Position numbers and translations under genes: made by a program
IMG/VR virus record: IMGVR_UViG_3300021959_006017
Span: 172,752-236,751 of that record
Strand: one strand, 5' to 3'
DNA: 64,000 nucleotides
The notes under the pieces: model-generated
Databases searched by the model: none
Told to the model about the DNA's origin: nothing
The model's input: only the letters and a program-made list of their open reading frames with translations
Shown here: piece by piece, positions 40,210-54,054 of the stretch
How the letters are laid out: every line of letters begins with the position of its first letter
How positions within the stretch are numbered: position 1 is the stretch's first letter

Positions 40210-40629
40210 ATGAAAGTAGGTTTTACCTGTTCAACATTTGATTTATTGCATGCAGGGCACGTACAAATGTTACGTGAAGCAAAAGAGCAGTGTGAATATT
40301 TGATCTGCGGACTACAAGTAGACCCTAGTCAAGATAGAGCAGAAAAAAACGCTCCTATACAAACTATTGTTGAACGTTATACACAACTAAAAGCAGTAGG
40401 TTATGTAGACGAGATAGTTCCATATGGTACAGAACAGGATCTAGAAGATATTTTAACAATGTATCATATTGATGTTAGAATACTGGGAGAGGAGTATAGA
40501 GATAAAGACTTCACAGGCAAAGATATTTGCCGTAGACGTGATATTGATCTATACTTCAATAAACGAGACCATCGCTTTAGCTCAAGTGGGTTGAGGAAGC
40601 GTGTAGCAGAAAGACAAAATAGTGCTTAA
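40210..40629 (+). CDS. Cytidylyltransferase (TagD/RfaE-like)
   Basis: TFDLLHAGH, RFSSS. Confidence 0.85.
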   Translation: MKVGFTCSTFDLLHAGHVQMLREAKEQCEYLICGLQVDPSQDRAEKNAPIQTIVERYTQLKAVGYVDEIVPYGTEQDLEDILTMYHIDVRILGEEYRDKDFTGKDICRRRDIDLYFNKRDHRFSSSGLRKRVAERQNSA

Positions 40630-40756
40630 CCAAGATCCTACTATTAACGAACTTAGAAGAATCTTTATTGATGCTGGTTTAGAGTTTTACATCAAGAAAG
40701 AAAAAGGCAATGTAGCTAAAGTACACTTTATTATTAAGGAGAAAGAAAATGGCTAG
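40622..40756 (+). CDS. Small hypothetical protein (44 aa)
   Basis: GTG start; overlaps both neighbours; not in ORF track. Confidence 0.4.
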   Translation: MLNQDPTINELRRIFIDAGLEFYIKKEKGNVAKVHFIIKEKENG

Positions 40757-40919
40757 ACCCGAAAGAACAGCAGAAGATCAAAGGTTAATCGACGAATGGT
40801 TAAGCAAGAACAAAGTCACAGTGTTAGCACCAAATGCTCGCACAGACGCAAACGAGATTAGGTCCCTTTGGGGCAAAAAGAAAAAGGCTGGCAGACCAAA
40901 AAAGGAGAGTAATGTATGA
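40749..40919 (+). CDS. Small basic hypothetical protein (56 aa)
   Basis: SD AAGGAG; MARPERTAEDQRLIDEWL... Confidence 0.55.
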   Translation: MARPERTAEDQRLIDEWLSKNKVTVLAPNARTDANEIRSLWGKKKKAGRPKKESNV

Positions 40920-41065
40920 AACTTACATTAACGATAACATTCTTAGCAGGGTTTGTATTAGGTGGTTTACTAGTAACACTTACACACCCTTATGAAGAAT
41001 GTAAGCGTATGTATACAACACCAGAAGATATTTCAGAATGTGTTTGGATCAAGGAGAATCCATAA
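40916..41065 (+). CDS. Small membrane-anchored protein (49 aa)
   Basis: SD AAGGAG; ATGA coupling; N-terminal TM helix. Confidence 0.55.
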   Translation: MKLTLTITFLAGFVLGGLLVTLTHPYEECKRMYTTPEDISECVWIKENP

Positions 41066-41229
41066 TGTGGGCATTATTTGTTATTAGCACAGTTGTTGGA
41101 TTAGAAGAACCTAAAGTAACACGCTATGCAGAGTTTGACACTAAGCATGAGTGTTATGTCGAATGGTATAACCTAACCGAAAAGTTTACGCAAAATGAAA
41201 TTGCGTATTGCAAGGAATCAAATGGATAA
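41065..41229 (+). CDS. Small hypothetical protein
   Basis: TAATG coupling; SD AAGGAG; MWALFVIS... Confidence 0.5.
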   Translation: MWALFVISTVVGLEEPKVTRYAEFDTKHECYVEWYNLTEKFTQNEIAYCKESNG

Positions 41230-41929
41230 CTTTATATTTGATGTAGACGGCACACTAACGCCAAGTAGACAAGAAATAGTTCCTCAGTTTAGAGAGTACT
41301 TTAAACACTTTTGTGACGAACATGCTGTATATCTTGTAACTGGTAGCGACTACGCAAAAACTCTTGAGCAGTTAGGTCCCGAAATATGCAACAAAGTAAA
41401 GCGCATCTATAACTGTTCAGGCAATGATGTTTGGGAAAAAGGTGTAAATGTTCGCACAAATGAATGGACACTGCCAGAAGATGCACACGAATGGTTAAGT
41501 GAACAACTAACTGCAAGTGCATTTCCGTTGCGTACTGGGTTACACTTTGAACATAGGCCCGGATTAGTAAACTTTAGTATAGTAGGACGTAACGCTACAC
41601 TAGGCGAACGTAAGCTATATGTTGAATGGGATACAGAGCATAACGAACGAGAAGTTATTTCACATAACTTTAATAAACTATTTAAAGAACTAGAAGCAAG
41701 GCCTGGTGGCGAAACAGGAATAGATATTGCACCCGAAGGTGCAAATAAAAGTCAAATAATCAATGACTTTACAAAATATGAATGGATAAACTTTTTTGGT
41801 GATAGAATGGATCCAGCTGGAAACGACTATCCTTTAGGAAGTATTATCAAATACGGCATGGCCTATCATGTGAAAGATTGGATGGATACCTGGGAGAGAC
41901 TACGTGCATATACTGATTACGGGAAATAA
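41222..41929 (+). CDS. HAD-IIB phosphomannomutase-like enzyme
   Basis: FDVDGTLT, VTGSD, NFSIVGR, FFGD...GNDY (PMM-type). Confidence 0.85.
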   Translation: MDNFIFDVDGTLTPSRQEIVPQFREYFKHFCDEHAVYLVTGSDYAKTLEQLGPEICNKVKRIYNCSGNDVWEKGVNVRTNEWTLPEDAHEWLSEQLTASAFPLRTGLHFEHRPGLVNFSIVGRNATLGERKLYVEWDTEHNEREVISHNFNKLFKELEARPGGETGIDIAPEGANKSQIINDFTKYEWINFFGDRMDPAGNDYPLGSIIKYGMAYHVKDWMDTWERLRAYTDYGK

Positions 41930-42668
41930 AGGCTTCGTAGGAAGTGCTTTATACGATAGATTGAGTTTACGTAACGATGTACAAGCGGTACACGGTATAG
42001 ACTTAAAAGACGGACAAGATTTACTTACATTTGATCGATGGCGTGAAGTAGATCTTGTTATTCATCTTGCAGGTAAAAGCGGTGTACGTGAAAGCCTAAG
42101 TGATCCTAGTTCTTATTGGTTTAATAATGTAGAAGCAAGTCGTAAACTATTTGAACGTTATGCAGATACACGCATACTATATGCGAGTAGTTCGAGCGCA
42201 TACGAACCCGATCTAAATCCTTATGCGGCTAGTAAGTTTTGTTTGGAAGAACTTGCAGAACGTTATCCAAATACACTGGGTATGCGTTTCCATACAGTGT
42301 ATTCAGAAAAATGTCCCAGAGAAAATATGTTCTTTAACAAACTATTAAATGGTAAACTAGAATATGTAACTAGGCACTATAGAGATTTTATACATCTAAA
42401 CGACATACTAGATGCAATAGAAATACTAATCAACGCTACACATGTCAAGGGTGTAGTTGATATCGGAACAGGCAATCCTGTAAAGATCCAAGACTTGGCG
42501 CCGGACTTACCTGTCCGTCTAAATACCCCAGGAGAGAGAAGTTGGACTTGTGCTAACATAGAAAAAATGAAAGCACTAGGCTTTAAACCTAAATACTCAG
42601 TAGAAAACTTCTTGACAAACAAAGGCAAAGATAATATAATAAACTTATTCAATGGAGAAACAGTATGA
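41904..42668 (+). CDS. NAD-dependent epimerase/dehydratase
   Basis: ITGNKGFVG, HLAG, YASSS, YAASK. Confidence 0.88.
   Translation: MHILITGNKGFVGSALYDRLSLRNDVQAVHGIDLKDGQDLLTFDRWREVDLVIHLAGKSGVRESLSDPSSYWFNNVEASRKLFERYADTRILYASSSSAYEPDLNPYAASKFCLEELAERYPNTLGMRFHTVYSEKCPRENMFFNKLLNGKLEYVTRHYRDFIHLNDILDAIEILINATHVKGVVDIGTGNPVKIQDLAPDLPVRLNTPGERSWTCANIEKMKALGFKPKYSVENFLTNKGKDNIINLFNGETV
42612..42640 (+). promoter_or_regulatory. Sigma70 promoter for the clamp/TGT-like operon
   Basis: TTGACA-N17-TATAAT, perfect consensus. Confidence 0.75.
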
Positions 42669-43405
42669 AAGATATCTTACAAGACGTAGTTGCTCACACA
42701 CACGCACTTGGCTTCCTTAGCTTAGTAAAAGTAAGCAACGACGAAGGCACACAGATTGATGCTATGGCAGAAGATCGTTCAGTTATTTTGAGCGCAACTG
42801 CACATGCACCTGTTGCTGAGTTTAAAGGCACATTTGGTATGCCTAACTTAGACAAGTTAGCGTTACACTTAAAGAATCCGGAGTATCAAAAAGATGCAAA
42901 GATTAATGTAGTTGAAGCAGAGCGTAATGGCGAAACTGTTCCAACACACATTCACTTTGAAAATGATGCTGGTGATTTCCAAAACGACTATCGTTTTATG
43001 AACAAAGCGATTATCGAAGAAAAACTTAAAACAGTTAAGTTTAAAGGTGCAGCATGGAATGTAAAACTGCAACCTAGCATTGGTGCTATTGGACGTTTGA
43101 AGTTGCAAGCGGCAGCACATTCAGAAGAGCCTACATTTAATGTTACTACTGCTGAAACTGGCGGTGTTAACGATCTAGTGTTTAGCTTTGGTGATGCAAG
43201 CACACACGCAGGTAAGTTTGTATTTGAAACAAATGTAGAAGGTACACTTACACATACTTGGAGTTGGCCGGTAGCGCAAGTTCAAGCAATTCTTAACTTG
43301 GACGGTGATGTTACAATGAGTATTTCAGATCAAGGTGCTATGCAGATCACTGTTGATTCAGGACTAGTAAAGTACGACTACATTCTACCAGCACAGAGCA
43401 AGTAA
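42665..43405 (+). CDS. Probable sliding clamp (gp45-like)
   Basis: 246 aa alpha/beta protein ending YDYILPA; clamp loader and PolB also present; no strong motif. Confidence 0.55.
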   Translation: MKDILQDVVAHTHALGFLSLVKVSNDEGTQIDAMAEDRSVILSATAHAPVAEFKGTFGMPNLDKLALHLKNPEYQKDAKINVVEAERNGETVPTHIHFENDAGDFQNDYRFMNKAIIEEKLKTVKFKGAAWNVKLQPSIGAIGRLKLQAAAHSEEPTFNVTTAETGGVNDLVFSFGDASTHAGKFVFETNVEGTLTHTWSWPVAQVQAILNLDGDVTMSISDQGAMQITVDSGLVKYDYILPAQSK

Positions 43406-44955
43406 TGAACAGAGATTTAACTGCAACACAAAATGACTATGCTGTTTTTCTTCCAGCGTTAAGTGGCTTCTATGCCACTTACGTTGGTAAACAGCGTCAT
43501 GATGAATACGTAGACAAAAATCGTATTCCAAGCAACTTTGCTAATGGTGTTGAGAGTTTAAACTATCTTAATGCACAAGAAGGTGCATTTACTTACAAAT
43601 GGACTCTATACTCTGCAGGACACGCTGACTTAGACACAACTAAGTTTGTTCCAAAAGAAGATATGGTGCGTAACAGAGATAGAGAGAACACTTGGCTACT
43701 AGGCGACTCAGGCGGCTTCCAGATTGGTAAAGGCGTTTGGGAAGGTGATTGGAAGGATCTTAACTGTCCAAAAGCACAAAAGAAACGTGATGGTGTGTTA
43801 CGTTGGATGGATGCTTATATGGACTATGGTATGATCCTTGATATTCCAGCATGGGTTGCACGTAGCCCAGAAGGCGCAAAAGCAACAGGCATTTCAACAT
43901 ACCAAGAAGCAGTAGAAGCAACACGTATTAACAATGAATACTTTATGAAACATCGTACTGGTGCTTGTAAGTTCTTAAACGTACTACAAGGCGAAAACCA
44001 TGTGGAAGCAGATGACTGGTACGAGCAGATGAAAGACTTTTGTGATCCAGTTAAGTATCCCGATAATCATTTTAATGGCTGGTCAATGGGTGGACAAAAC
44101 ATGTGTGACCTAGAGCTTGCACTAAGACGTATTGTAACACTACACTACGACGGCTTGCTACAAAAAGGTGTACACGATGTAATGCACTTCTTGGGTACTT
44201 CAAAACTCGAATGGGCATTGTTGTTAACAGACATTCAACGAGCAGTAAGGAAGTATTATAATGAAAACTTCACTATCACTTTTGACTGTGCTAGTCCTTT
44301 CCTTGCAACCGCAAACGGACAGGTATACATACAGAATGAAACTACGGACAGGTCGAAATGGACATATCGAATGGTGCCGTCAGTTGACGATAAAAAATAT
44401 GCTACAGACACCCGTCTGTTTAGAGATGCTACTGTATCAGATGGGGTATTTAAAAACTTTGAAGACAGTCCCATCACTGCCGAACTCAAAGTATCAGACG
44501 TTTGTACATATGCTCCCGGAGATCTAAATAAAATAGGTAAAGAAGGAAAAACATCATGGGATAGTTTTTCATATGCGATCCAAATGGGTCATAACGTGTG
44601 GAGTCACATTAATGCAGTTCAAGAAGCGAACAGACAATACGACAATGGAGTTATTCCGAAAATGCTTGTACAAGAGCGATTTGACAGGGTTCTATTTAGA
44701 GATGTTGTGGAAGAAATATTCTCAAAGACTACGCTAGAAGATTCACTTGCAGTTATTAAAGAACACGAAAAGTTCTTTATGAGTATCAGAGGCACACGCG
44801 GTTATACTGGCAAAAAGATTGTTAGTGCTAGACCTAAGTTTGCTGAACTATTTGATGTAGAAGAAGTAGAAGTAGATTCGGAAGAGTTTACTGAAGCACA
44901 AATACAAAAACTTGAGGAACTAGAAGATGAGCAACTTCACGGAGAAACACAATAA
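43405..44955 (+). CDS. dpdA: TGT/DpdA-like guanine transglycosylase
   Basis: DSGGFQ, ILDIP, VLQG, HFLG, TFDCASP; clustered with queD/folE/queE. Confidence 0.75.
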   Translation: MNRDLTATQNDYAVFLPALSGFYATYVGKQRHDEYVDKNRIPSNFANGVESLNYLNAQEGAFTYKWTLYSAGHADLDTTKFVPKEDMVRNRDRENTWLLGDSGGFQIGKGVWEGDWKDLNCPKAQKKRDGVLRWMDAYMDYGMILDIPAWVARSPEGAKATGISTYQEAVEATRINNEYFMKHRTGACKFLNVLQGENHVEADDWYEQMKDFCDPVKYPDNHFNGWSMGGQNMCDLELALRRIVTLHYDGLLQKGVHDVMHFLGTSKLEWALLLTDIQRAVRKYYNENFTITFDCASPFLATANGQVYIQNETTDRSKWTYRMVPSVDDKKYATDTRLFRDATVSDGVFKNFEDSPITAELKVSDVCTYAPGDLNKIGKEGKTSWDSFSYAIQMGHNVWSHINAVQEANRQYDNGVIPKMLVQERFDRVLFRDVVEEIFSKTTLEDSLAVIKEHEKFFMSIRGTRGYTGKKIVSARPKFAELFDVEEVEVDSEEFTEAQIQKLEELEDEQLHGETQ

Positions 44956-45130
44956 ACTTGCTACACACCTGCAAGAACTTTATCGCAAGCACAGAGCACT
45001 TGACGAAGAAGTAAAAGACATGTATACTAAGTTTGCAGATGACGGTGCTATTAACCGTAAGAAAACTCAAAAGCTATGGCTCAAAGATGAAATACACAGA
45101 TTAGAAACAGAACTAAAGGCACTAGGATGA
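44927..45130 (+). CDS. Small coiled-coil protein (DUF465/YdcH-like)
   Basis: KHRALDEEV...KTQKLWLKDEI. Confidence 0.6.
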   Translation: MSNFTEKHNKLATHLQELYRKHRALDEEVKDMYTKFADDGAINRKKTQKLWLKDEIHRLETELKALG

Positions 45131-45729
45131 CATTAAATGTAGTTAAACTAAACAAAGCAATCGAAGTCGGAACTGTGATTCCTCTAAAAGAATGCGGTGG
45201 TAATATCGGCCGATGGGTTGAAGATCAGCTTGAAGATAACGGATACTCTGTTAACAGAGGCAAAGGTATTGATTTGCAAAAGTTAGGTATTGAAGTCAAA
45301 ACTCGTAAAGTTGATAGCGGAAGCGGACATACAGTAGGTGCAATGTTACCACAAGACATTGTTCAAGAAGATTGGCAAGCTGGTAATAATATGTTTGACA
45401 AAGTACAACGTCAGTACAGAGTTAAACATAAAGTAAACGAACTTACAGGCGATAACATTGTTGTAAGTGCGAAAGTACATGACTTTACTGACGATACAAT
45501 CCAAACGAAACTTAAAGAAGCATGGAGCCATTGTCGAAATGTTCTTGTGCAGAACTCCGGACATGACTTTTCTTATATTAGAGGAGAAGGTATGTGGGCT
45601 TATTTAGAACTACAAGAAAATGGTTCCTATCAGTTCCGTATTACTGACAAGTATATGAATGAAATGGAAAACATTGCAAACCTTAATCGAACAAAAATGT
45701 TTTTTGTAGAGGCACAGTATGAAGCGTGA
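45127..45729 (+). CDS. PD-(D/E)xK restriction-endonuclease-like protein
   Basis: GNIGRWVE...GIDL...IEVKT. Confidence 0.55.
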   Translation: MTLNVVKLNKAIEVGTVIPLKECGGNIGRWVEDQLEDNGYSVNRGKGIDLQKLGIEVKTRKVDSGSGHTVGAMLPQDIVQEDWQAGNNMFDKVQRQYRVKHKVNELTGDNIVVSAKVHDFTDDTIQTKLKEAWSHCRNVLVQNSGHDFSYIRGEGMWAYLELQENGSYQFRITDKYMNEMENIANLNRTKMFFVEAQYEA

Positions 45730-46252
45730 TTATGAAACTGGTGTAGCAGATGATGCAGTTTTCTTCATAGGCGTAGAAGTAGAAAAGACTCCTGCATTTG
45801 GATTAAAAACATTATTTGTTACAGGTGTACAACCTTGTGATGTTATTCAAAAACATTACGATGAAGAACAATGCGAACATATCTTCTTTGGTGCTAATCA
45901 TAGTTTTAATCCAGGTGTAAACTTTCCAGAAGATAATGATCAATGGGATCCTTGGGACAATATGATCAAAGCATTTTTAACAGCAGGCAAACTGTGTAGT
46001 TTAGATATTCCCATTTCACTTGCAGAAGCATTTTTAGAATCACCATTGATCGAATACGACAACTTTATCCCACAACTACGCATTCCATTGCCTTATGCAA
46101 AACTGTGGAACTACAACACAATGTTGAAGATTGATGATAAAGACTTTAAGGCAACTAATCCTGGTGTTTGGTGTCATAGTTTACACGATCTAATGGACAG
46201 AGAAAAGTTTACAGATTGGGGCAAATATGGGCTTGACAAAGTTATTGAATGA
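45719..46252 (+). CDS. Hypothetical protein in the modification locus
   Basis: GVEVEKTP, HIFFGANHSF, KIDDKDFKATNPGVW. Confidence 0.65.
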   Translation: MKRDYETGVADDAVFFIGVEVEKTPAFGLKTLFVTGVQPCDVIQKHYDEEQCEHIFFGANHSFNPGVNFPEDNDQWDPWDNMIKAFLTAGKLCSLDIPISLAEAFLESPLIEYDNFIPQLRIPLPYAKLWNYNTMLKIDDKDFKATNPGVWCHSLHDLMDREKFTDWGKYGLDKVIE

Positions 46253-46970: not shown

Positions 46971-48029
46971 ATGACTATCTATATCGTAGACATCGAAGCA
47001 GTTGATACACGTTACACTAAACAATGGAAGGACTATCTTCCAAAGCAACTGCAACGGGCTACGAATAAAGAAGTTGTAGTTATTAGTGGAGGAGAAACGC
47101 CTCAGGCTACTACGCCTGGGGCTTTTCTTAACTTCGGTGGTACAAATGTTTATAAGTCAAAACAACTAGAACAGATTGGAGAAATGTTCTGCAATGGTGA
47201 AGTTAAGAACGGCGATTATTTTTTGTATACCGATGCCTGGAATCCTACAGTTATACAACTACGCTACATGGCAGAGTTACTTGGTGTTAATGTTAGCATT
47301 GGTGGCCTCTGGCATGCTGGTAGTTATGACCCACAAGATTTCTTGGGCAGACTAATAGGTAGCAAACCTTGGGTCAGACATGCTGAGATGTCAATGTTTG
47401 AATGTTACGATGACAACTTCTTTGCAAGTGATTTCCATATTGATATGTTTACAGATGTATTTGACGAAGATTATGCAGTTGACTGGAATAGAATACATCG
47501 TGTAGGTTGGCCCATGGAGTATCTAAAGAACAGTTTAGATAGCTATAAAGGTATGGAAAAACGAGATCTTATTCTCTTTCCGCATCGTGTTGCTCCTGAA
47601 AAACAAGTTGATATTTTCCGTGATCTAGCAGAGCAACTTCCTGAGTACGAGTTTGTTATCTGTCAAGAACGTGAACTTACTAAAAATGAATACCATAACT
47701 TGTTAGGTGAAGCAAAACTTGTGTTTAGTGCTAACCTACAAGAGACACTGGGCATTAGTTGGTATGAAGGTGCTCTTGTAAATGCTATTCCTATGGTTCC
47801 TGATAGATTAAGTTATTCAGAGATGGCACTACCCGAGTTTAAGTATCCAAGTGTGTGGACTGAAGACTTTACAAGTTACAGACAGCATAGAAATAAAGTA
47901 GTTGCACAAATACGTGAGTACATGGAAAACTATGACGATTTCTTAGTAAGCCTTGAGAAGCAACGTACTAAACTAAACAAAGAATTTTTTTCAGGAGCAG
48001 CATTGTATGACGCAATCAAAGAAAGATGA
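46971..48029 (+). CDS. GT-B glycosyltransferase
   Basis: FPHRVAPEKQ, QETLGISWYEG (EX7E), PDRLSYSEM. Confidence 0.8.
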   Translation: MTIYIVDIEAVDTRYTKQWKDYLPKQLQRATNKEVVVISGGETPQATTPGAFLNFGGTNVYKSKQLEQIGEMFCNGEVKNGDYFLYTDAWNPTVIQLRYMAELLGVNVSIGGLWHAGSYDPQDFLGRLIGSKPWVRHAEMSMFECYDDNFFASDFHIDMFTDVFDEDYAVDWNRIHRVGWPMEYLKNSLDSYKGMEKRDLILFPHRVAPEKQVDIFRDLAEQLPEYEFVICQERELTKNEYHNLLGEAKLVFSANLQETLGISWYEGALVNAIPMVPDRLSYSEMALPEFKYPSVWTEDFTSYRQHRNKVVAQIREYMENYDDFLVSLEKQRTKLNKEFFSGAALYDAIKER

Positions 48030-51101: not shown

Positions 51102-51791
51102 TTGATGAGCAAAGCAGAACAAATAAAAGCAAAACTAGAAGATGCTGGCATCCGCTATTGGGCAGGTGACAACATCTCAGAAGTCCTACAAGCAGGTGAC
51201 AAAGAAGCACTTATTGAAGATGCCACACTAGCATTTAATCAAGTACTAGATGCACTAGTTATTGATCGCTATAACGATCCTAACTCGCAAGGTACAGCAA
51301 GACGTCTTGCAAAAATGTACTTTAATGAGATTATGGCAGGACGCTATGATCCTAAACCCGACGCAACAGCATTTCCAAATGATAGCGATGACCGTTATGA
51401 AGGTATGCTAGTTGTACGTTCAGAACTAAAAAGTATATGTTCACATCATCACCAGCCAGTTACTGGTGTAGCGTACATTGGTATTATTGCCGCAGACAAA
51501 CTTATCGGACTTAGCAAGTACACACGTATTGCACAATGGTGTGCTAGACGTGGTACACTGCAAGAAGAACTTGCAAACGATATTGCACGTGAGATTAAGG
51601 CTGCAACTGGTGCTCAAAACTTAGGTGTATACATTCAAGCAACACACGGTTGCTGTGAAAATCGTGGCATTATGGCACATAGTTCACTTACACAGACAAC
51701 TGTACTTGAAGGTAGTTTTAAACACGATCCAGGTGCAAAGAAAGAGTTCTTTGACAACATTAAACTACAACAGGAGTTTGCACCACGATGA
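51102..51791 (+). CDS. folE: GTP cyclohydrolase I
   Basis: CSHHH, GLSKYTR, LQEEL, HGCCENRG. Confidence 0.93.
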   Translation: MMSKAEQIKAKLEDAGIRYWAGDNISEVLQAGDKEALIEDATLAFNQVLDALVIDRYNDPNSQGTARRLAKMYFNEIMAGRYDPKPDATAFPNDSDDRYEGMLVVRSELKSICSHHHQPVTGVAYIGIIAADKLIGLSKYTRIAQWCARRGTLQEELANDIAREIKAATGAQNLGVYIQATHGCCENRGIMAHSSLTQTTVLEGSFKHDPGAKKEFFDNIKLQQEFAPR

Positions 51792-52681
51792 AGTTAAGAT
51801 ATTCAGAAGCATTTTATAGTGTACAGGGCGAAGGCAAGTTTGTTGGAGTCCCTAGTGTGTTCTTAAGAACATTTGGTTGTAACTTTCGTTGCATGAACTT
51901 TGGCACAGGCGAAACAAAAGATCGATGGACACTGCACAAAGAAGGTAAGAAGTATAACGATGAAGTTAAAGCTCTTATCGATGCTGGTGTTCATAAGACT
52001 ACAAAAGAGTTTAATGACTTGCCTATCATTCACACAGGCTGTGACACATATGCAAGTATCTATCCAGAGTTTAAAGACTTCAACAAACTAGCAGAAGTTG
52101 ATGAAGTAGTTGAACATTTGCTGTCACTTACTCCAGAAGGTAAGTGGACACAGGACAATGGTCAAGACATTCATTTGATTATGACCGGTGGAGAGCCTTT
52201 GTTAGCGTGGCAAAAGCTCTACATTGATTTGTTCGAACATCCACGTATGCAGGATTTAAAAAATGTCACATTTGAAACAAACACTACACAACATTTACAC
52301 GACGATTTCTTCAACTATCTCACAGACCAAGACAGATTTGCGGTCACGTGGTCTTGTTCCCCAAAACTTAGTGTTAGCGGAGAACCTTGGGATACTGCTA
52401 TACTGCCTGCTGTCGCTCGCGAGTATAGCCTTGTTGACGGCAGTGACATGTATCTCAAGTTTGTTGTCGCTACTGCTGACGATTTCGAAGAAGTTACAAG
52501 AGCTGTCGAAGAGTATCGTAGCGCCGGGGTCGAGTGTCCGGTATATCTTATGCCGCTTGGAGGACGTAGCGAAGAATACAACCTCAATGTTAAAGAAGTC
52601 GCCGAAGCATGTATGGAGCGAGGTTGGAGGTTCAGCCCCCGACTACACATCAGCCTATTCGGAAATGCATGGGGGACCTAA
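51788..52681 (+). CDS. queE: 7-carboxy-7-deazaguanine synthase (radical SAM)
   Basis: FYSVQGEG, FLRTFGCNFRC...CDT, TGGEP, ETN, SPKL, SPRLH. Confidence 0.9.
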   Translation: MKLRYSEAFYSVQGEGKFVGVPSVFLRTFGCNFRCMNFGTGETKDRWTLHKEGKKYNDEVKALIDAGVHKTTKEFNDLPIIHTGCDTYASIYPEFKDFNKLAEVDEVVEHLLSLTPEGKWTQDNGQDIHLIMTGGEPLLAWQKLYIDLFEHPRMQDLKNVTFETNTTQHLHDDFFNYLTDQDRFAVTWSCSPKLSVSGEPWDTAILPAVAREYSLVDGSDMYLKFVVATADDFEEVTRAVEEYRSAGVECPVYLMPLGGRSEEYNLNVKEVAEACMERGWRFSPRLHISLFGNAWGT

Positions 52682-53409: not shown

Positions 53410-53654
53410 TGTCTTTTAGTTGGGATAGAATGTATAAGCACGAAGAAAATATAGAAAGAGATGTTATCGATCGTGTAGAAGAATATGTATGTGAGTTTTA
53501 CGAAGTAAGTGAAGTTGAGTTGTTATCTCCTTCACAGTTTGAAGAACTTGAAATGTTTTACAGAGAAATGAACGAATATAGTGTTATGTACTGTGGATTT
53601 ACAAATGTAATAAATCGTTGGCTAGATAACCAAGAGTTTGATCATGATGCGTGA
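53409..53654 (+). CDS. Acidic hypothetical protein
   Basis: SD GGAGG; TAATG coupling. Confidence 0.55.
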   Translation: MSFSWDRMYKHEENIERDVIDRVEEYVCEFYEVSEVELLSPSQFEELEMFYREMNEYSVMYCGFTNVINRWLDNQEFDHDA

Positions 53655-54054
53655 TGATTTAATGGTACAACAGCAAGTGTCTACTGTGTGGCAACACATG
53701 GTAGGTGTTATTTGTTTGAATCAAACAAACCGTAAACAAGTAAAGCGTGTTCTTCCTATGCTGTTAGGCATTTGTCCTACACCTGTACACTTAATAAATA
53801 CTGCTCCAGACACAATCAAAATGATTATACAACCTTTGGGCATGTTAAATGTCCGAGAGAAGCGTCTTCGCCAAATGTCAAAAGATTACTTGACATGGGA
53901 CGGAAATGATGCTACAATGTTATATGGCATTGGGAAGTACGGTAGTGATAGCTATAGACTTTTCTATAAGAATGAGATTCCCGACAACATCGGTGATCAT
54001 GAACTGAAACGATATGTGGAAGAAGAACTAAATGGCAACTTATATACTAGTTGA
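53644..54054 (+). CDS. HhH DNA glycosylase-like protein (MBD4/EndoIII-like)
   Basis: ICLNQT, PLG, LYGIGKYGSDSYRLF, DHEL. Confidence 0.75.
   Translation: MMRDDLMVQQQVSTVWQHMVGVICLNQTNRKQVKRVLPMLLGICPTPVHLINTAPDTIKMIIQPLGMLNVREKRLRQMSKDYLTWDGNDATMLYGIGKYGSDSYRLFYKNEIPDNIGDHELKRYVEEELNGNLYTS

What the first reader, a model, noticed from the sequence alone, without database searches (positions are those of the whole stretch)
45127..45729. Restriction-like nuclease inside the modification locus
Seen: a PD-(D/E)xK pattern (G.IG..VE...ID....IEVKT) two genes downstream of the DpdA-like gene, overlapping both neighbours. Known: T4 pairs base modification with nucleases that destroy unmodified DNA. 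Inference: a phage-borne restriction/modification pair that degrades host or competitor DNA lacking deazaguanine; a free-standing homing endonuclease is the alternative.
Basis: inference. Interest (0 to 1): 0.6.

Follow-up and report, generated by a model that had tools for sequence, protein, structure and literature searches.

The report
Mobile MutH-like nuclease cassette in phage
The 200-residue gene is a real, intact MutH/Sau3AI-type DNA-cutting enzyme in a marine jumbo phage. It is an optional, horizontally moving cassette dropped into the phage's deazaguanine DNA-modification operon, not a fixed partner of that pathway.

Summary
The ORF at 45127-45729 (+) is real. It overlaps both neighbours and lies two genes after a TGT-fold, DpdA-like gene. 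Pfam, PHROGs, NCBIfam and PADLOC do not recognise it. An AlphaFold model (pLDDT 88.8) matches MutH (Z 14.6, 178 residues) and Sau3AI (Z 11.6). All five MutH catalytic residues align to residues that are invariant in 29 homologues: E32, D49, E56, K58, K92. Within allele types dN/dS is 0.10-0.32, so the nuclease call is confirmed.

The restriction/modification-pair reading is only partly supported. Of 74 related viral contigs with a 75-92% identical DpdA-like gene, 69 lack the nuclease. In 48 of the 74, DUF465 and the next gene simply abut. The DpdA-like tree needs at least 7-8 gains or losses. Nuclease alleles are incongruent with their flanks. Homologues also sit in unrelated contexts: beside HNH genes, after a five-gene adenine-methylase array, and between AAA and VWA genes.

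GATC and every other 4-bp palindrome are not consistently avoided by carriers. My best reading is a mobile, accessory, short-site nuclease (probably a nickase) whose carriers are protected by their own DNA modification and which attacks unmodified host or rival-phage DNA. Classical homing is the main rival. Specificity and modification sensitivity are untested.

The parts
45127..45729 (+). MutH/Sau3AI-fold PD-(D/E)xK endonuclease gene (200 aa): the mobile cassette
   Evidence: ORF. 30 metagenomic homologues. Model pLDDT 88.8. MutH 2aoq Z 14.6 over 178 aa at rmsd 3.2; Sau3AI Z 11.6. ESM Atlas neighbours are MutH/Sau3AI clusters. dN/dS 0.10-0.32.
45220..45402 (+). Active-site codons: E32 (45220-45222), D49 (45271-45273), E56 (45292-45294), K58 (45298-45300), K92 (45400-45402)
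   Evidence: All five are invariant in alignment A1. They align to MutH E56, D70, E77, K79 and K116. The role of K116 is taken from bioRxiv 10.64898/2026.04.21.719898.
44927..45130 (+). DUF465 gene (67 aa). Its stop overlaps the nuclease start (ATGA). This is the 5' boundary of the insertion site.
   Evidence: Pfam PF04325, E 2.9e-10. In relatives without the nuclease the same ATGA overlap joins DUF465 directly to the 177-aa gene.
45719..46252 (+). Conserved 177-aa gene of unknown function. This is the 3' boundary of the insertion site.
   Evidence: Present in all clade loci at 60-93% identity. It abuts DUF465 (10 bp or less) in 48 of 74 loci.
43405..44955 (+). DpdA-like DNA-guanine transglycosylase candidate (TGT fold, divergent subfamily)
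   Evidence: No Pfam TGT hit. Model pLDDT 76.9, and all top PDB hits are TGT. Atlas TGT-like clusters. 37% identical homologue in PA5oct, which is reported to carry a modified G. More than 598 IMG/VR contigs.
46971..48029 (+). Conserved 352-aa gene that travels with the DpdA-like gene. Function unknown.
   Evidence: 69-86% identical across the clade (72% in L035); 43% identical and directly adjacent to the DpdA-like gene in G003. A 353-aa ORF follows the homologue in PA5oct.
51102..52681 (+). GTP cyclohydrolase I (51102-51791) and a radical-SAM, QueE-like gene (51788-52681): deazaguanine precursor genes
   Evidence: Pfam PF01227, E 1.9e-37; a weak PF04055 hit. Conserved in relatives.
40210..42668 (+). 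Sugar-nucleotide genes upstream in the same gene string: cytidylyltransferase-like, phosphomannomutase, NAD epimerase
   Evidence: Pfam PF01467, PF03332 and PF01370. Syntenic in relatives.

Best explanation
SHOWN. The gene encodes an intact single-domain nuclease of the MutH/Sau3AI branch of the PD-(D/E)xK superfamily, with the full MutH catalytic set. It is under purifying selection. It is an accessory cassette inserted precisely at the DUF465|177-aa-gene junction of a 7-deazaguanine-type modification operon in a marine jumbo phage. Within this phage clade it is sporadic and is exchanged horizontally as distinct allele types.

INFERRED. Like MutH, Sau3AI and BcnI, it acts as a monomer on a short recognition site, nicking or cutting 5' of the site by two-metal (Mg2+) catalysis. 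K92 positions the attacking water. Carriers keep normal numbers of GATC and of every other 4-bp palindrome, so their own DNA is most likely protected by base modification. Candidates are the 7-deazaguanine derivative put in by the DpdA-like enzyme, Dam-type adenine methylation in this genome, and a battery of adenine methylases in one distant carrier. The enzyme would then damage DNA that lacks that mark, either host DNA or the DNA of co-infecting relatives. That would give the carrier, and the cassette itself, an advantage. It is an optional weapon that rides in modification loci, not a component of the modification pathway.
For: Fold and active site.

Purifying selection.

Accessory and mobile:
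- 69 of 74 closest relatives lack the gene, and the flanking genes abut in 48.
- At least 8 presence/absence changes on the DpdA-like tree, 7 of them forced by starred branches. The window sits in a starred clade with five nuclease-less relatives.
- The insertion boundaries are clean.
- Allele identity exceeds flank identity in some pairs: window vs L119 is 87% against 81% (DpdA-like) and 68% (177-aa gene); L013 vs L015 is 93% against 76%. In other pairs it is far lower: window vs L013 is 62% against 84% (DpdA-like) and 88% (177-aa gene).
- A 70%-identical allele sits in a non-syntenic context.

Short-site, modification-protected reading:
- Single domain, with no extra DNA-binding module, whereas phage homing endonucleases usually carry one (PMC10448857).
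- GATC observed/expected is about 1.0-1.1 in all carriers, and no 4-bp palindrome is consistently purged.
- The gene is translationally coupled into the DpdA-like operon.
- The L034 homologue directly follows five N6-adenine methylase genes.
- The window genome has a Dam-family methylase that the complete nuclease-less relative G008 lacks.
- PA5oct, which has a homologous DpdA-like gene, is reported to carry a modified G in GA/GG contexts, and GATC contains GA.
Against: No biochemical data exist. Recognition sequence, nicking versus double-strand cutting, and modification sensitivity are all unknown. The residues that read GATC and sense methylation in MutH could not be mapped with confidence at 14% identity. 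Several homologues lie in contexts with no visible modification gene, although those contigs are short or fragmentary. The Dam link rests on one carrier genome and one non-carrier genome and could not be tested elsewhere. The same junction also carries unrelated non-nuclease cargo, so position in the operon may reflect a recombination hot spot rather than function.
Confidence: 0.5

Rival explanations
1. Classical free-standing homing endonuclease. It cuts a specific, longer target in or near the empty DUF465|177-aa-gene junction of related phages during co-infection, and is copied in by recombinational repair. DNA modification is irrelevant.
For: Sporadic presence at one identical intergenic site, with at least 7-8 gains or losses. 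Allele and flank trees disagree. Precise cassette boundaries. Other insertion sites exist, namely between AAA and DUF2201 genes in G003, and homologues are often adjacent to HNH or T5orf172 genes. This resembles known phage HEG behaviour (PMC10448857).
Against: The whole protein is one MutH-like domain with no added DNA-binding domain. Its structural relatives read 4-5 bp sites. The same junction holds unrelated non-nuclease cargo in about 21 loci, so the site is a general hot spot. No k-mer clearly marks empty alleles against filled ones. Catalytic residues are kept across deep divergence.
Confidence: 0.25
2. One reading: an obligate restriction partner of the deazaguanine modification system, that is, a fixed R-M-like pair.
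For: Operon position and translational coupling. The gene co-occurs with the DpdA-like gene in the G000 clade and, 19 kb apart, in G003.
Against: About 93% of the closest DpdA-like operons lack it. The complete 357-kb relative G008 has the operon but no nuclease. Homologues occur beside other kinds of genes.
Confidence: 0.07
3. A phage MutH orthologue used with the phage's Dam methylase and host MutS/MutL for methyl-directed mismatch repair or recombination of phage DNA.
For: MutH is the best structural match, and all its catalytic residues are kept. The same genome has a Dam-family methylase.
Against: Only 14% identity to MutH and no Pfam MutH hit. The distribution is sporadic and horizontally mobile, and alleles diverge fast, which is unlike a repair gene. 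Dam lies 78 kb away in an unrelated island.
Confidence: 0.05
4. A nuclease with another phage role, such as processing replication or packaging intermediates, or anti-defence, and with no self/non-self discrimination.
For: The function is untested. Other cargo at the same junction looks like miscellaneous accessory genes.
Against: Core DNA-processing roles are not expected for a gene missing from most close relatives. There is no match to known defence or anti-defence models.
Confidence: 0.1

Closest known systems
E. coli/H. influenzae MutH (PDB 2aoq, 2azo)
   Same: Best structural match: Z 14.6, 178 of 200 residues, rmsd 3.2. The same size class and single domain. E, D, ExK and the extra Lys all align, including the identical D-x6-E-x-K spacing and the local motifs G-x-I-G-x-x-x-E and D-[FL]-x-x-L-G-[IV]-E-[LV]-K-T.
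   Different: About 14% identity and no PF02976 hit. Encoded by a phage as a mobile accessory cassette. No evidence of MutL dependence or of GATC/hemimethylation sensing. The C-terminal recognition arm is shorter and could not be mapped.
Sau3AI (PDB 4pxg, 7xm0) and related GATC type II enzymes
   Same: Second-best fold match (Z 11.6 and 10.5). A restriction enzyme of the same fold that cuts unmodified DNA.
   Different: Sau3AI is a two-domain protein of about 490 aa that needs a second site for activation. The phage protein is one domain. There is no adjacent cognate methylase in the window.
Monomeric type II enzymes BcnI/MvaI
   Same: The same fold class (BcnI Z 7.6, MvaI Z 4.7). An Atlas neighbour cluster partly carries PF15515. 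These are monomers that cut both strands in turn.
   Different: A much weaker match than to MutH. Their specificities (CCSGG, CCWGG) are unrelated to anything testable here.
Free-standing phage homing endonucleases (T4 Seg/Mob; ICP1 T5orf172 and HNH HEGs)
   Same: Sporadic intergenic insertion next to conserved genes, horizontal spread, and frequent neighbourhood with other HEGs.
   Different: A different nuclease fold. No separate DNA-binding domain. Homing has not been shown.
T4 DenA/DenB: nucleases that destroy unmodified cytosine DNA
   Same: Conceptual analogue only: a phage nuclease spared from self-damage by the phage's base modification (established T4 biology, from my own knowledge).
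   Different: Unrelated folds. Those are core genes in T4, whereas this gene is optional and mobile. The modification here is on guanine and/or adenine.

Membership tests
MutH/Sau3AI endonuclease family (PD-(D/E)xK superfamily) | MutH-type alpha/beta restriction-endonuclease fold covering the whole domain | tested here: met
   2aoq_A Z 14.6, 178 aa aligned, rmsd 3.2. Sau3AI Z 11.6 and 10.5. The next, unrelated REases score 7.6 or less. Foldseek E 1.2e-7. Atlas structural match TM 0.75 to a PF02976 cluster.
MutH/Sau3AI endonuclease family (PD-(D/E)xK superfamily) | Catalytic residues E56, D70, E77, K79 and K116 (MutH numbering) | tested here: met
   The hhalign alignment places invariant E32, D49, E56, K58 and K92 on them. 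The alignment statistic itself is weak (E 0.007-0.01), but it agrees with the structural match.
MutH/Sau3AI endonuclease family (PD-(D/E)xK superfamily) | Sequence-profile membership (Pfam PF02976 above the gathering score) | tested here: not met
   The window protein gets no hit even at E 10 or less. The L034 homologue scores 14.6 bits against a cut-off of 23. This is therefore a structural or superfamily-level relative, not a Pfam-level member.
MutH/Sau3AI endonuclease family (PD-(D/E)xK superfamily) | GATC recognition and a methyl-sensing residue (MutH Tyr212) | tested here: inconclusive
   The global alignment puts invariant R171 opposite MutH R184, but the C-terminal arm is shorter and the Tyr212 equivalent is ambiguous. 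GATC is not avoided in carriers, which neither proves nor excludes GATC specificity.
MutH (mismatch-repair orthologue) | Activation by MutL and action on hemimethylated GATC | not testable with these tools
   Needs biochemistry.
Free-standing homing endonuclease gene | Sporadic presence among close relatives at a fixed site between conserved genes | tested here: met
   5 of 74 loci carry it. There are at least 7-8 changes on the DpdA-like tree. The boundaries are clean.
Free-standing homing endonuclease gene | Nuclease domain joined to a DNA-binding module that reads a long target | tested here: not met
   One compact domain fills residues 3-187. Compare PMC10448857.
Free-standing homing endonuclease gene | Cleavage of the empty allele near the insertion site | not testable with these tools
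   A k-mer comparison of empty and filled junction flanks gave nothing clear.
Type II restriction-modification system | A cognate DNA methyltransferase gene adjacent to the nuclease | tested here: not met
   The window neighbours are DUF465 and an unknown 177-aa gene. The only methylase found (Dam family) is 78 kb away. A distant homologue (L034) does follow five N6-adenine methylase genes.
DpdA / TGT superfamily (for the neighbouring gene 43405-44955) | TGT TIM-barrel fold, the DSGGFQ-type motif, and linkage to 7-deazaguanine biosynthesis genes | tested here: met
   All top 50 Foldseek hits are TGT. The DSGGFQ residues (D101-Q106) are invariant in the 14-sequence alignment A4. FolE and a QueE-like gene lie in the window. 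QueE, QueF, QueC and FolE lie beside the homologues. Pfam TGT itself does not hit.

The most novel reading that the evidence does not exclude
These MutH-like genes are a previously undescribed class of mobile, modification-keyed restriction cassettes of phages. There are several deeply diverged allele types, perhaps with different specificities. They hop between hot spots in phage genomes and preferentially sit beside DNA-modification genes (deazaguanine transglycosylase, adenine-methylase arrays). Each uses the carrier's modification as self-immunity and cuts host DNA or the DNA of co-infecting relatives. This would be phage-versus-phage restriction that also drives the cassette's own spread.
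Probability: 0.25. Interest if true: 0.75.

Novelty: new variant of a known kind. Interest (0 to 1): 0.5.

Why it matters
MutH/Sau3AI-type nucleases are known from bacterial mismatch repair and restriction. They are essentially undescribed in phages. tblastn of E. coli MutH against about 50,000 phage records found only two unannotated metagenomic records, plus a Salmonella enterica draft-genome contig in that collection carrying the bacterial mutH gene. The family studied here matches no PHROG.

A small, intact, mobile member that repeatedly lands in DNA-modification loci of abundant marine jumbo phages would have several uses. It gives a concrete candidate for a phage nuclease whose self-immunity depends on hypermodified DNA. 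It could become a reagent that discriminates 7-deazaguanine-modified or methylated DNA. It is also a clean case for studying how accessory nuclease cassettes spread between phage genomes.

If it proves to be an ordinary homing-type element, the interest is mainly that it adds a new fold to free-standing phage homing endonucleases.

Tried and rejected
- **Sequence-family scans.** Pfam, PHROGs, NCBIfam and PADLOC gave nothing for the ORF. An HMM search against PDB sequences returned only noise. tblastn against cultured-phage records found no match.
- **AATT specificity.** AATT is strongly depleted in this genome (265 seen, 1200-1983 expected). I rejected AATT as the recognition site. The 87%-identical allele's contig has near-normal AATT (64 of 88 expected). 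Other carriers are normal. A nuclease-less relative (L066) has zero AATT.
- **Any consistently avoided 4-bp palindrome in carriers.** None was found, and GATC is at expectation everywhere.
- **A target site marking empty junctions.** The k-mer contrast between empty and filled flanks was not interpretable.
- **Dam-nuclease co-occurrence.** Only one informative pair exists (G000 has both, G008 has neither). The G004 contig ends just short of the Dam position. The Dam island carries no other recognisable R-M gene.
- **Cellular genomes.** The only match was one 5.5-kb contig in a Crocinitomicaceae MAG, probably phage DNA.
- **Residue-level mapping of MutH's DNA-reading residues.** The C-terminal alignment is unreliable.
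- **Not used.** The large representative-protein search was skipped because the fold had already settled the family. No reads tools were used. No alternative genetic code was used.

Full report
**Setting.** The window is bases 172752-236751 of a 236,751-bp IMG/VR viral contig (CheckV completeness 67%). It comes from a jumbo phage with about 39% GC and almost all genes on the + strand. A complete relative of 357,559 bp exists (G008). No cultured phage resembles the region at the DNA level.

**Observation.** The ORF at 45127-45729 (+) encodes 200 aa. Its ATG overlaps the stop of a 67-aa DUF465 gene (an ATGA overlap). Its last 11 nt overlap the start of a conserved 177-aa gene. A word-based protein search found 30 homologues, all from metagenomes or viral contigs and mostly unnamed (a few 'hypothetical protein'), at 38-92% identity. 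In the alignment of the 28 near full-length homologues with the window protein, E32, D49, E56, K58, R60, S64, S66, H68, K92 and R171 are among the invariant positions.

**What the protein is.** Pfam, PHROGs, NCBIfam and PADLOC give nothing, and a profile search of PDB sequences gives only noise.
- The AlphaFold2 model built on the alignment is confident (mean pLDDT 88.8, pTM 0.84).
- Foldseek puts MutH first (E 1.2e-7), followed by Sau3AI.
- The exhaustive structural search gives MutH 2aoq Z 14.6 (178 residues, rmsd 3.2), Sau3AI N-domain Z 11.6 and Sau3AI C-domain Z 10.5. After that comes a drop to generic restriction enzymes at Z 7.6 or less.
- The ESM Atlas independently places the protein next to viral and bacterial clusters named MutH/Sau3AI family endonuclease.
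- Profile alignment to E. coli MutH is statistically weak but chemically exact. E32, D49, E56, K58 and K92 fall on MutH E56, D70, E77, K79 and K116, with the same D-x6-E-x-K spacing and similar flanking motifs. A recent cryo-EM preprint assigns K116 the role of positioning the attacking water.
- Within allele types dN/dS is 0.10-0.32.

I conclude with high confidence that this is an active-looking, single-domain MutH/Sau3AI-superfamily endonuclease. It is too divergent to meet the Pfam MutH model.

**The locus.** The 'modification locus' label holds.
- The 516-aa protein misses Pfam TGT, but it contains a DSGGFQ motif, and its model's top 50 PDB matches are all tRNA-guanine transglycosylases.
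- GTP cyclohydrolase I and a radical-SAM, QueE-like gene lie 6-7 kb downstream.
- Its homologue in Pseudomonas phage PA5oct (37% identity) sits near an annotated 7-carboxy-7-deazaguanine synthase. Its homologue in Vibrio phage 2.275.O sits beside QueF, a YhhQ-type transporter, QueC and FolE.
- PA5oct DNA is reported to resist enzymes in a way that points to a modified G in GA and/or GG contexts (PMC12191111).
- QueC was not found in the available 67% of this genome.

**Is the nuclease part of that system?** It is not an integral part.
- A scan of IMG/VR with the DpdA-like protein found more than 598 contigs. I examined the best 80, at 75-92% identity.
- Of the 74 with enough downstream sequence, 69 have no MutH-like ORF. 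In 48 of the 74, DUF465 and the 177-aa gene abut within 10 bp. The other 26 carry inserts of 120-1293 bp.
- Five of those inserts are MutH-like genes. One of the five (L059) is a very divergent variant with hhalign probability 82%.
- The remaining inserts are unrelated cargo: a membrane protein, a GCV_T-like protein, a GNAT-like protein and small ORFs.
- On a DpdA-like tree of 92 rows, presence/absence needs at least 8 changes, 7 of them forced by well-supported branches. The window sits in a 100%-supported clade whose other five members all lack the gene.
- DNA alignment shows a clean cassette. In empty alleles the DUF465 stop overlaps the ATG of the 177-aa gene. In the window the same ATGA instead starts the nuclease, and the ATG of the 177-aa gene reappears 11 nt before the nuclease stop.
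- The complete relative G008 has the whole operon but no nuclease.

**Mobility.** The nuclease is usually the least conserved gene of the block, at 49-61% identity against 63-90% for its neighbours. Yet some pairs of phages share nuclease alleles that are more similar than their flanks:

| Pair | Nuclease | DpdA-like gene | 177-aa gene |
|---|---|---|---|
| window vs L119 | 87% | 81% | 68% |
| L013 vs L015 | 93% | 76% | 76% |
| L021 vs L023 | 82% | 69% | not available |
| window vs L013 | 62% | 84% | 88% |

The locus therefore holds several deep allele types that move independently of the genome backbone. Homologues also occupy other sites:
- between an AAA ATPase and a DUF2201/VWA gene, next to an HNH gene, in G003, where the DpdA-like gene is 19 kb away;
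- after an AAA ATPase in a cyanophage-like contig;
- after a DUF6551 protein plus small HNH or T5orf172 genes;
- a 70%-identical allele, closer to the window's than most syntenic alleles, after radical-SAM and MazE-like genes and before an HNH gene in a different kind of phage;
- in one phage, a clear homologue (hhalign probability 100%) directly after five tandem N6-adenine DNA-methylase paralogues and before a Vsr-like nuclease.

Cellular genomes yielded only one short contig in a Crocinitomicaceae MAG.

**How it probably works.** What is shown is an intact MutH-type active site in a one-domain protein that is mobile and accessory. What follows is inferred. Structural relatives of this size (MutH, BcnI, MvaI) are monomers that read 4-5 bp and nick or cut. 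There is no extra DNA-binding module of the kind typical for phage homing endonucleases. A short-site nuclease would meet hundreds of sites in a genome of about 350 kb. Yet carriers do not avoid GATC (883 seen, 843 expected in this genome) or any other 4-bp palindrome in a consistent way.

The simplest reconciliation is self-protection by DNA modification. That would also explain why the cassette is so often found beside modification genes. This genome additionally encodes a Dam-family methylase, which the complete nuclease-less relative lacks. With one genome on each side this is only a hint. GATC contains the GA context reported as modified in PA5oct, so either mark could shield GATC-like sites.

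I therefore favour a mobile, modification-shielded restriction-like nuclease acting on host or rival-phage DNA, at about 0.5. Classical homing is the main rival at about 0.25. The two are not exclusive, because cutting unprotected relatives during co-infection would also spread the cassette. A true mismatch-repair MutH is unlikely given the mobility and divergence.

**Limits.** Recognition sequence, strand behaviour and modification sensitivity are untested. The MutH residues that read GATC and sense methylation could not be mapped. Many carrier contigs are fragments, so absence of modification genes on them says little. The sample of nuclease-positive loci was enriched by searching for them. 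The unbiased figure is 5 of 74.

Noticed in passing
whole genome G000 (window included); loci L038, L051, L054, L058, L060, L063, L064, L066, L067: Close relatives in this phage clade have each purged a different 4-bp palindrome almost completely. AGCT is 0 of 20-31 expected in L051, L058 and L064, and 2 of 32 in L038. CATG is 0 of 31-40 in L054, L060 and L063. AATT is 0 of 62 in L066. In this genome AATT is 265 against 1200-1983 expected. GATC is never depleted. This looks like lineage-specific escape from different host 4-cutter restriction systems at sites the G modification does not cover. It is independent of the MutH-like gene.
   Followed up: partly
window 43405-44955 (+) and 46971-48029 (+): The DpdA-like protein belongs to a TGT-fold subfamily that Pfam TGT does not detect. 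It is present on more than 598 IMG/VR contigs and in PA5oct-like, Vibrio 2.275.O and Sinorhizobium Phosso jumbo phages. It travels with a conserved gene of about 352 aa of unknown function, which is adjacent to it in G003 and probably in PA5oct. Its relation to the published DpdA1-4 subfamilies was not determined.
   Followed up: partly
window 40210-42668 (+): A cytidylyltransferase-like gene, a phosphomannomutase and an NAD-dependent sugar epimerase sit in the same gene string just upstream of the DpdA-like gene and are syntenic across the clade. A sugar-bearing hypermodification is conceivable.
   Followed up: no
window 45130/45719 junction; loci L040-L116: The DUF465|177-aa-gene junction is a cargo hot spot. 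26 of 74 relatives carry inserts there: a 135-aa membrane protein, a GCV_T-like 189-aa protein, a GNAT-like 140-aa protein, several ORFs of 50-96 aa, and MutH-like genes of at least three deeply diverged types (window type, L035 at 35%, L059 variant).
   Followed up: partly
L034 2944-9982: Five tandem paralogous Eco57I/N6_Mtase-type adenine methylase genes (378-396 aa) have near-identical N-terminal halves and diverged C-terminal halves. A 183-aa methylase fragment follows, then the MutH-like homologue, then a 523-aa Vsr/MTES_1575-like nuclease.
   Followed up: partly
G000:C1:140129-141034 (outside the window; L142 10129-11034): A Dam-family (D12 class) N6-adenine DNA methylase lies in a genome-specific island. 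It is absent from the complete relative G008. Neighbours include a 2OG-Fe(II) oxygenase-like gene and a DUF6552 gene.
   Followed up: partly
window 53638-54054 (+): A small HhH-GPD (EndoIII/Ogg-like) protein, just upstream of and overlapping the 5'-3' exonuclease gene, is accessory. It is absent from G003, G004, G005 and G008 but present near the MutH-like gene in L030-L032 and L036. HhH-GPD-type domains have been reported as sensors of hypermodified bases.
   Followed up: no
L006 6339-7535, L008 3320-4531, L032 8048-9184: A protein of about 380-400 aa (weak DUF6551 hit, with a QHRT motif reminiscent of ParB/DndB-like proteins) recurs immediately upstream of distant MutH-like homologues in otherwise different contexts. 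It may be a functional partner.
   Followed up: no
L003-L005 256-2421; L157 1-3834: The family-B DNA polymerase just upstream of the locus carries an intein in some relatives. In PA5oct it is split by an annotated Hef-like homing endonuclease. A DUF723 (HEG-associated) gene lies next to it in L003. This neighbourhood is rich in mobile nuclease elements.
   Followed up: no
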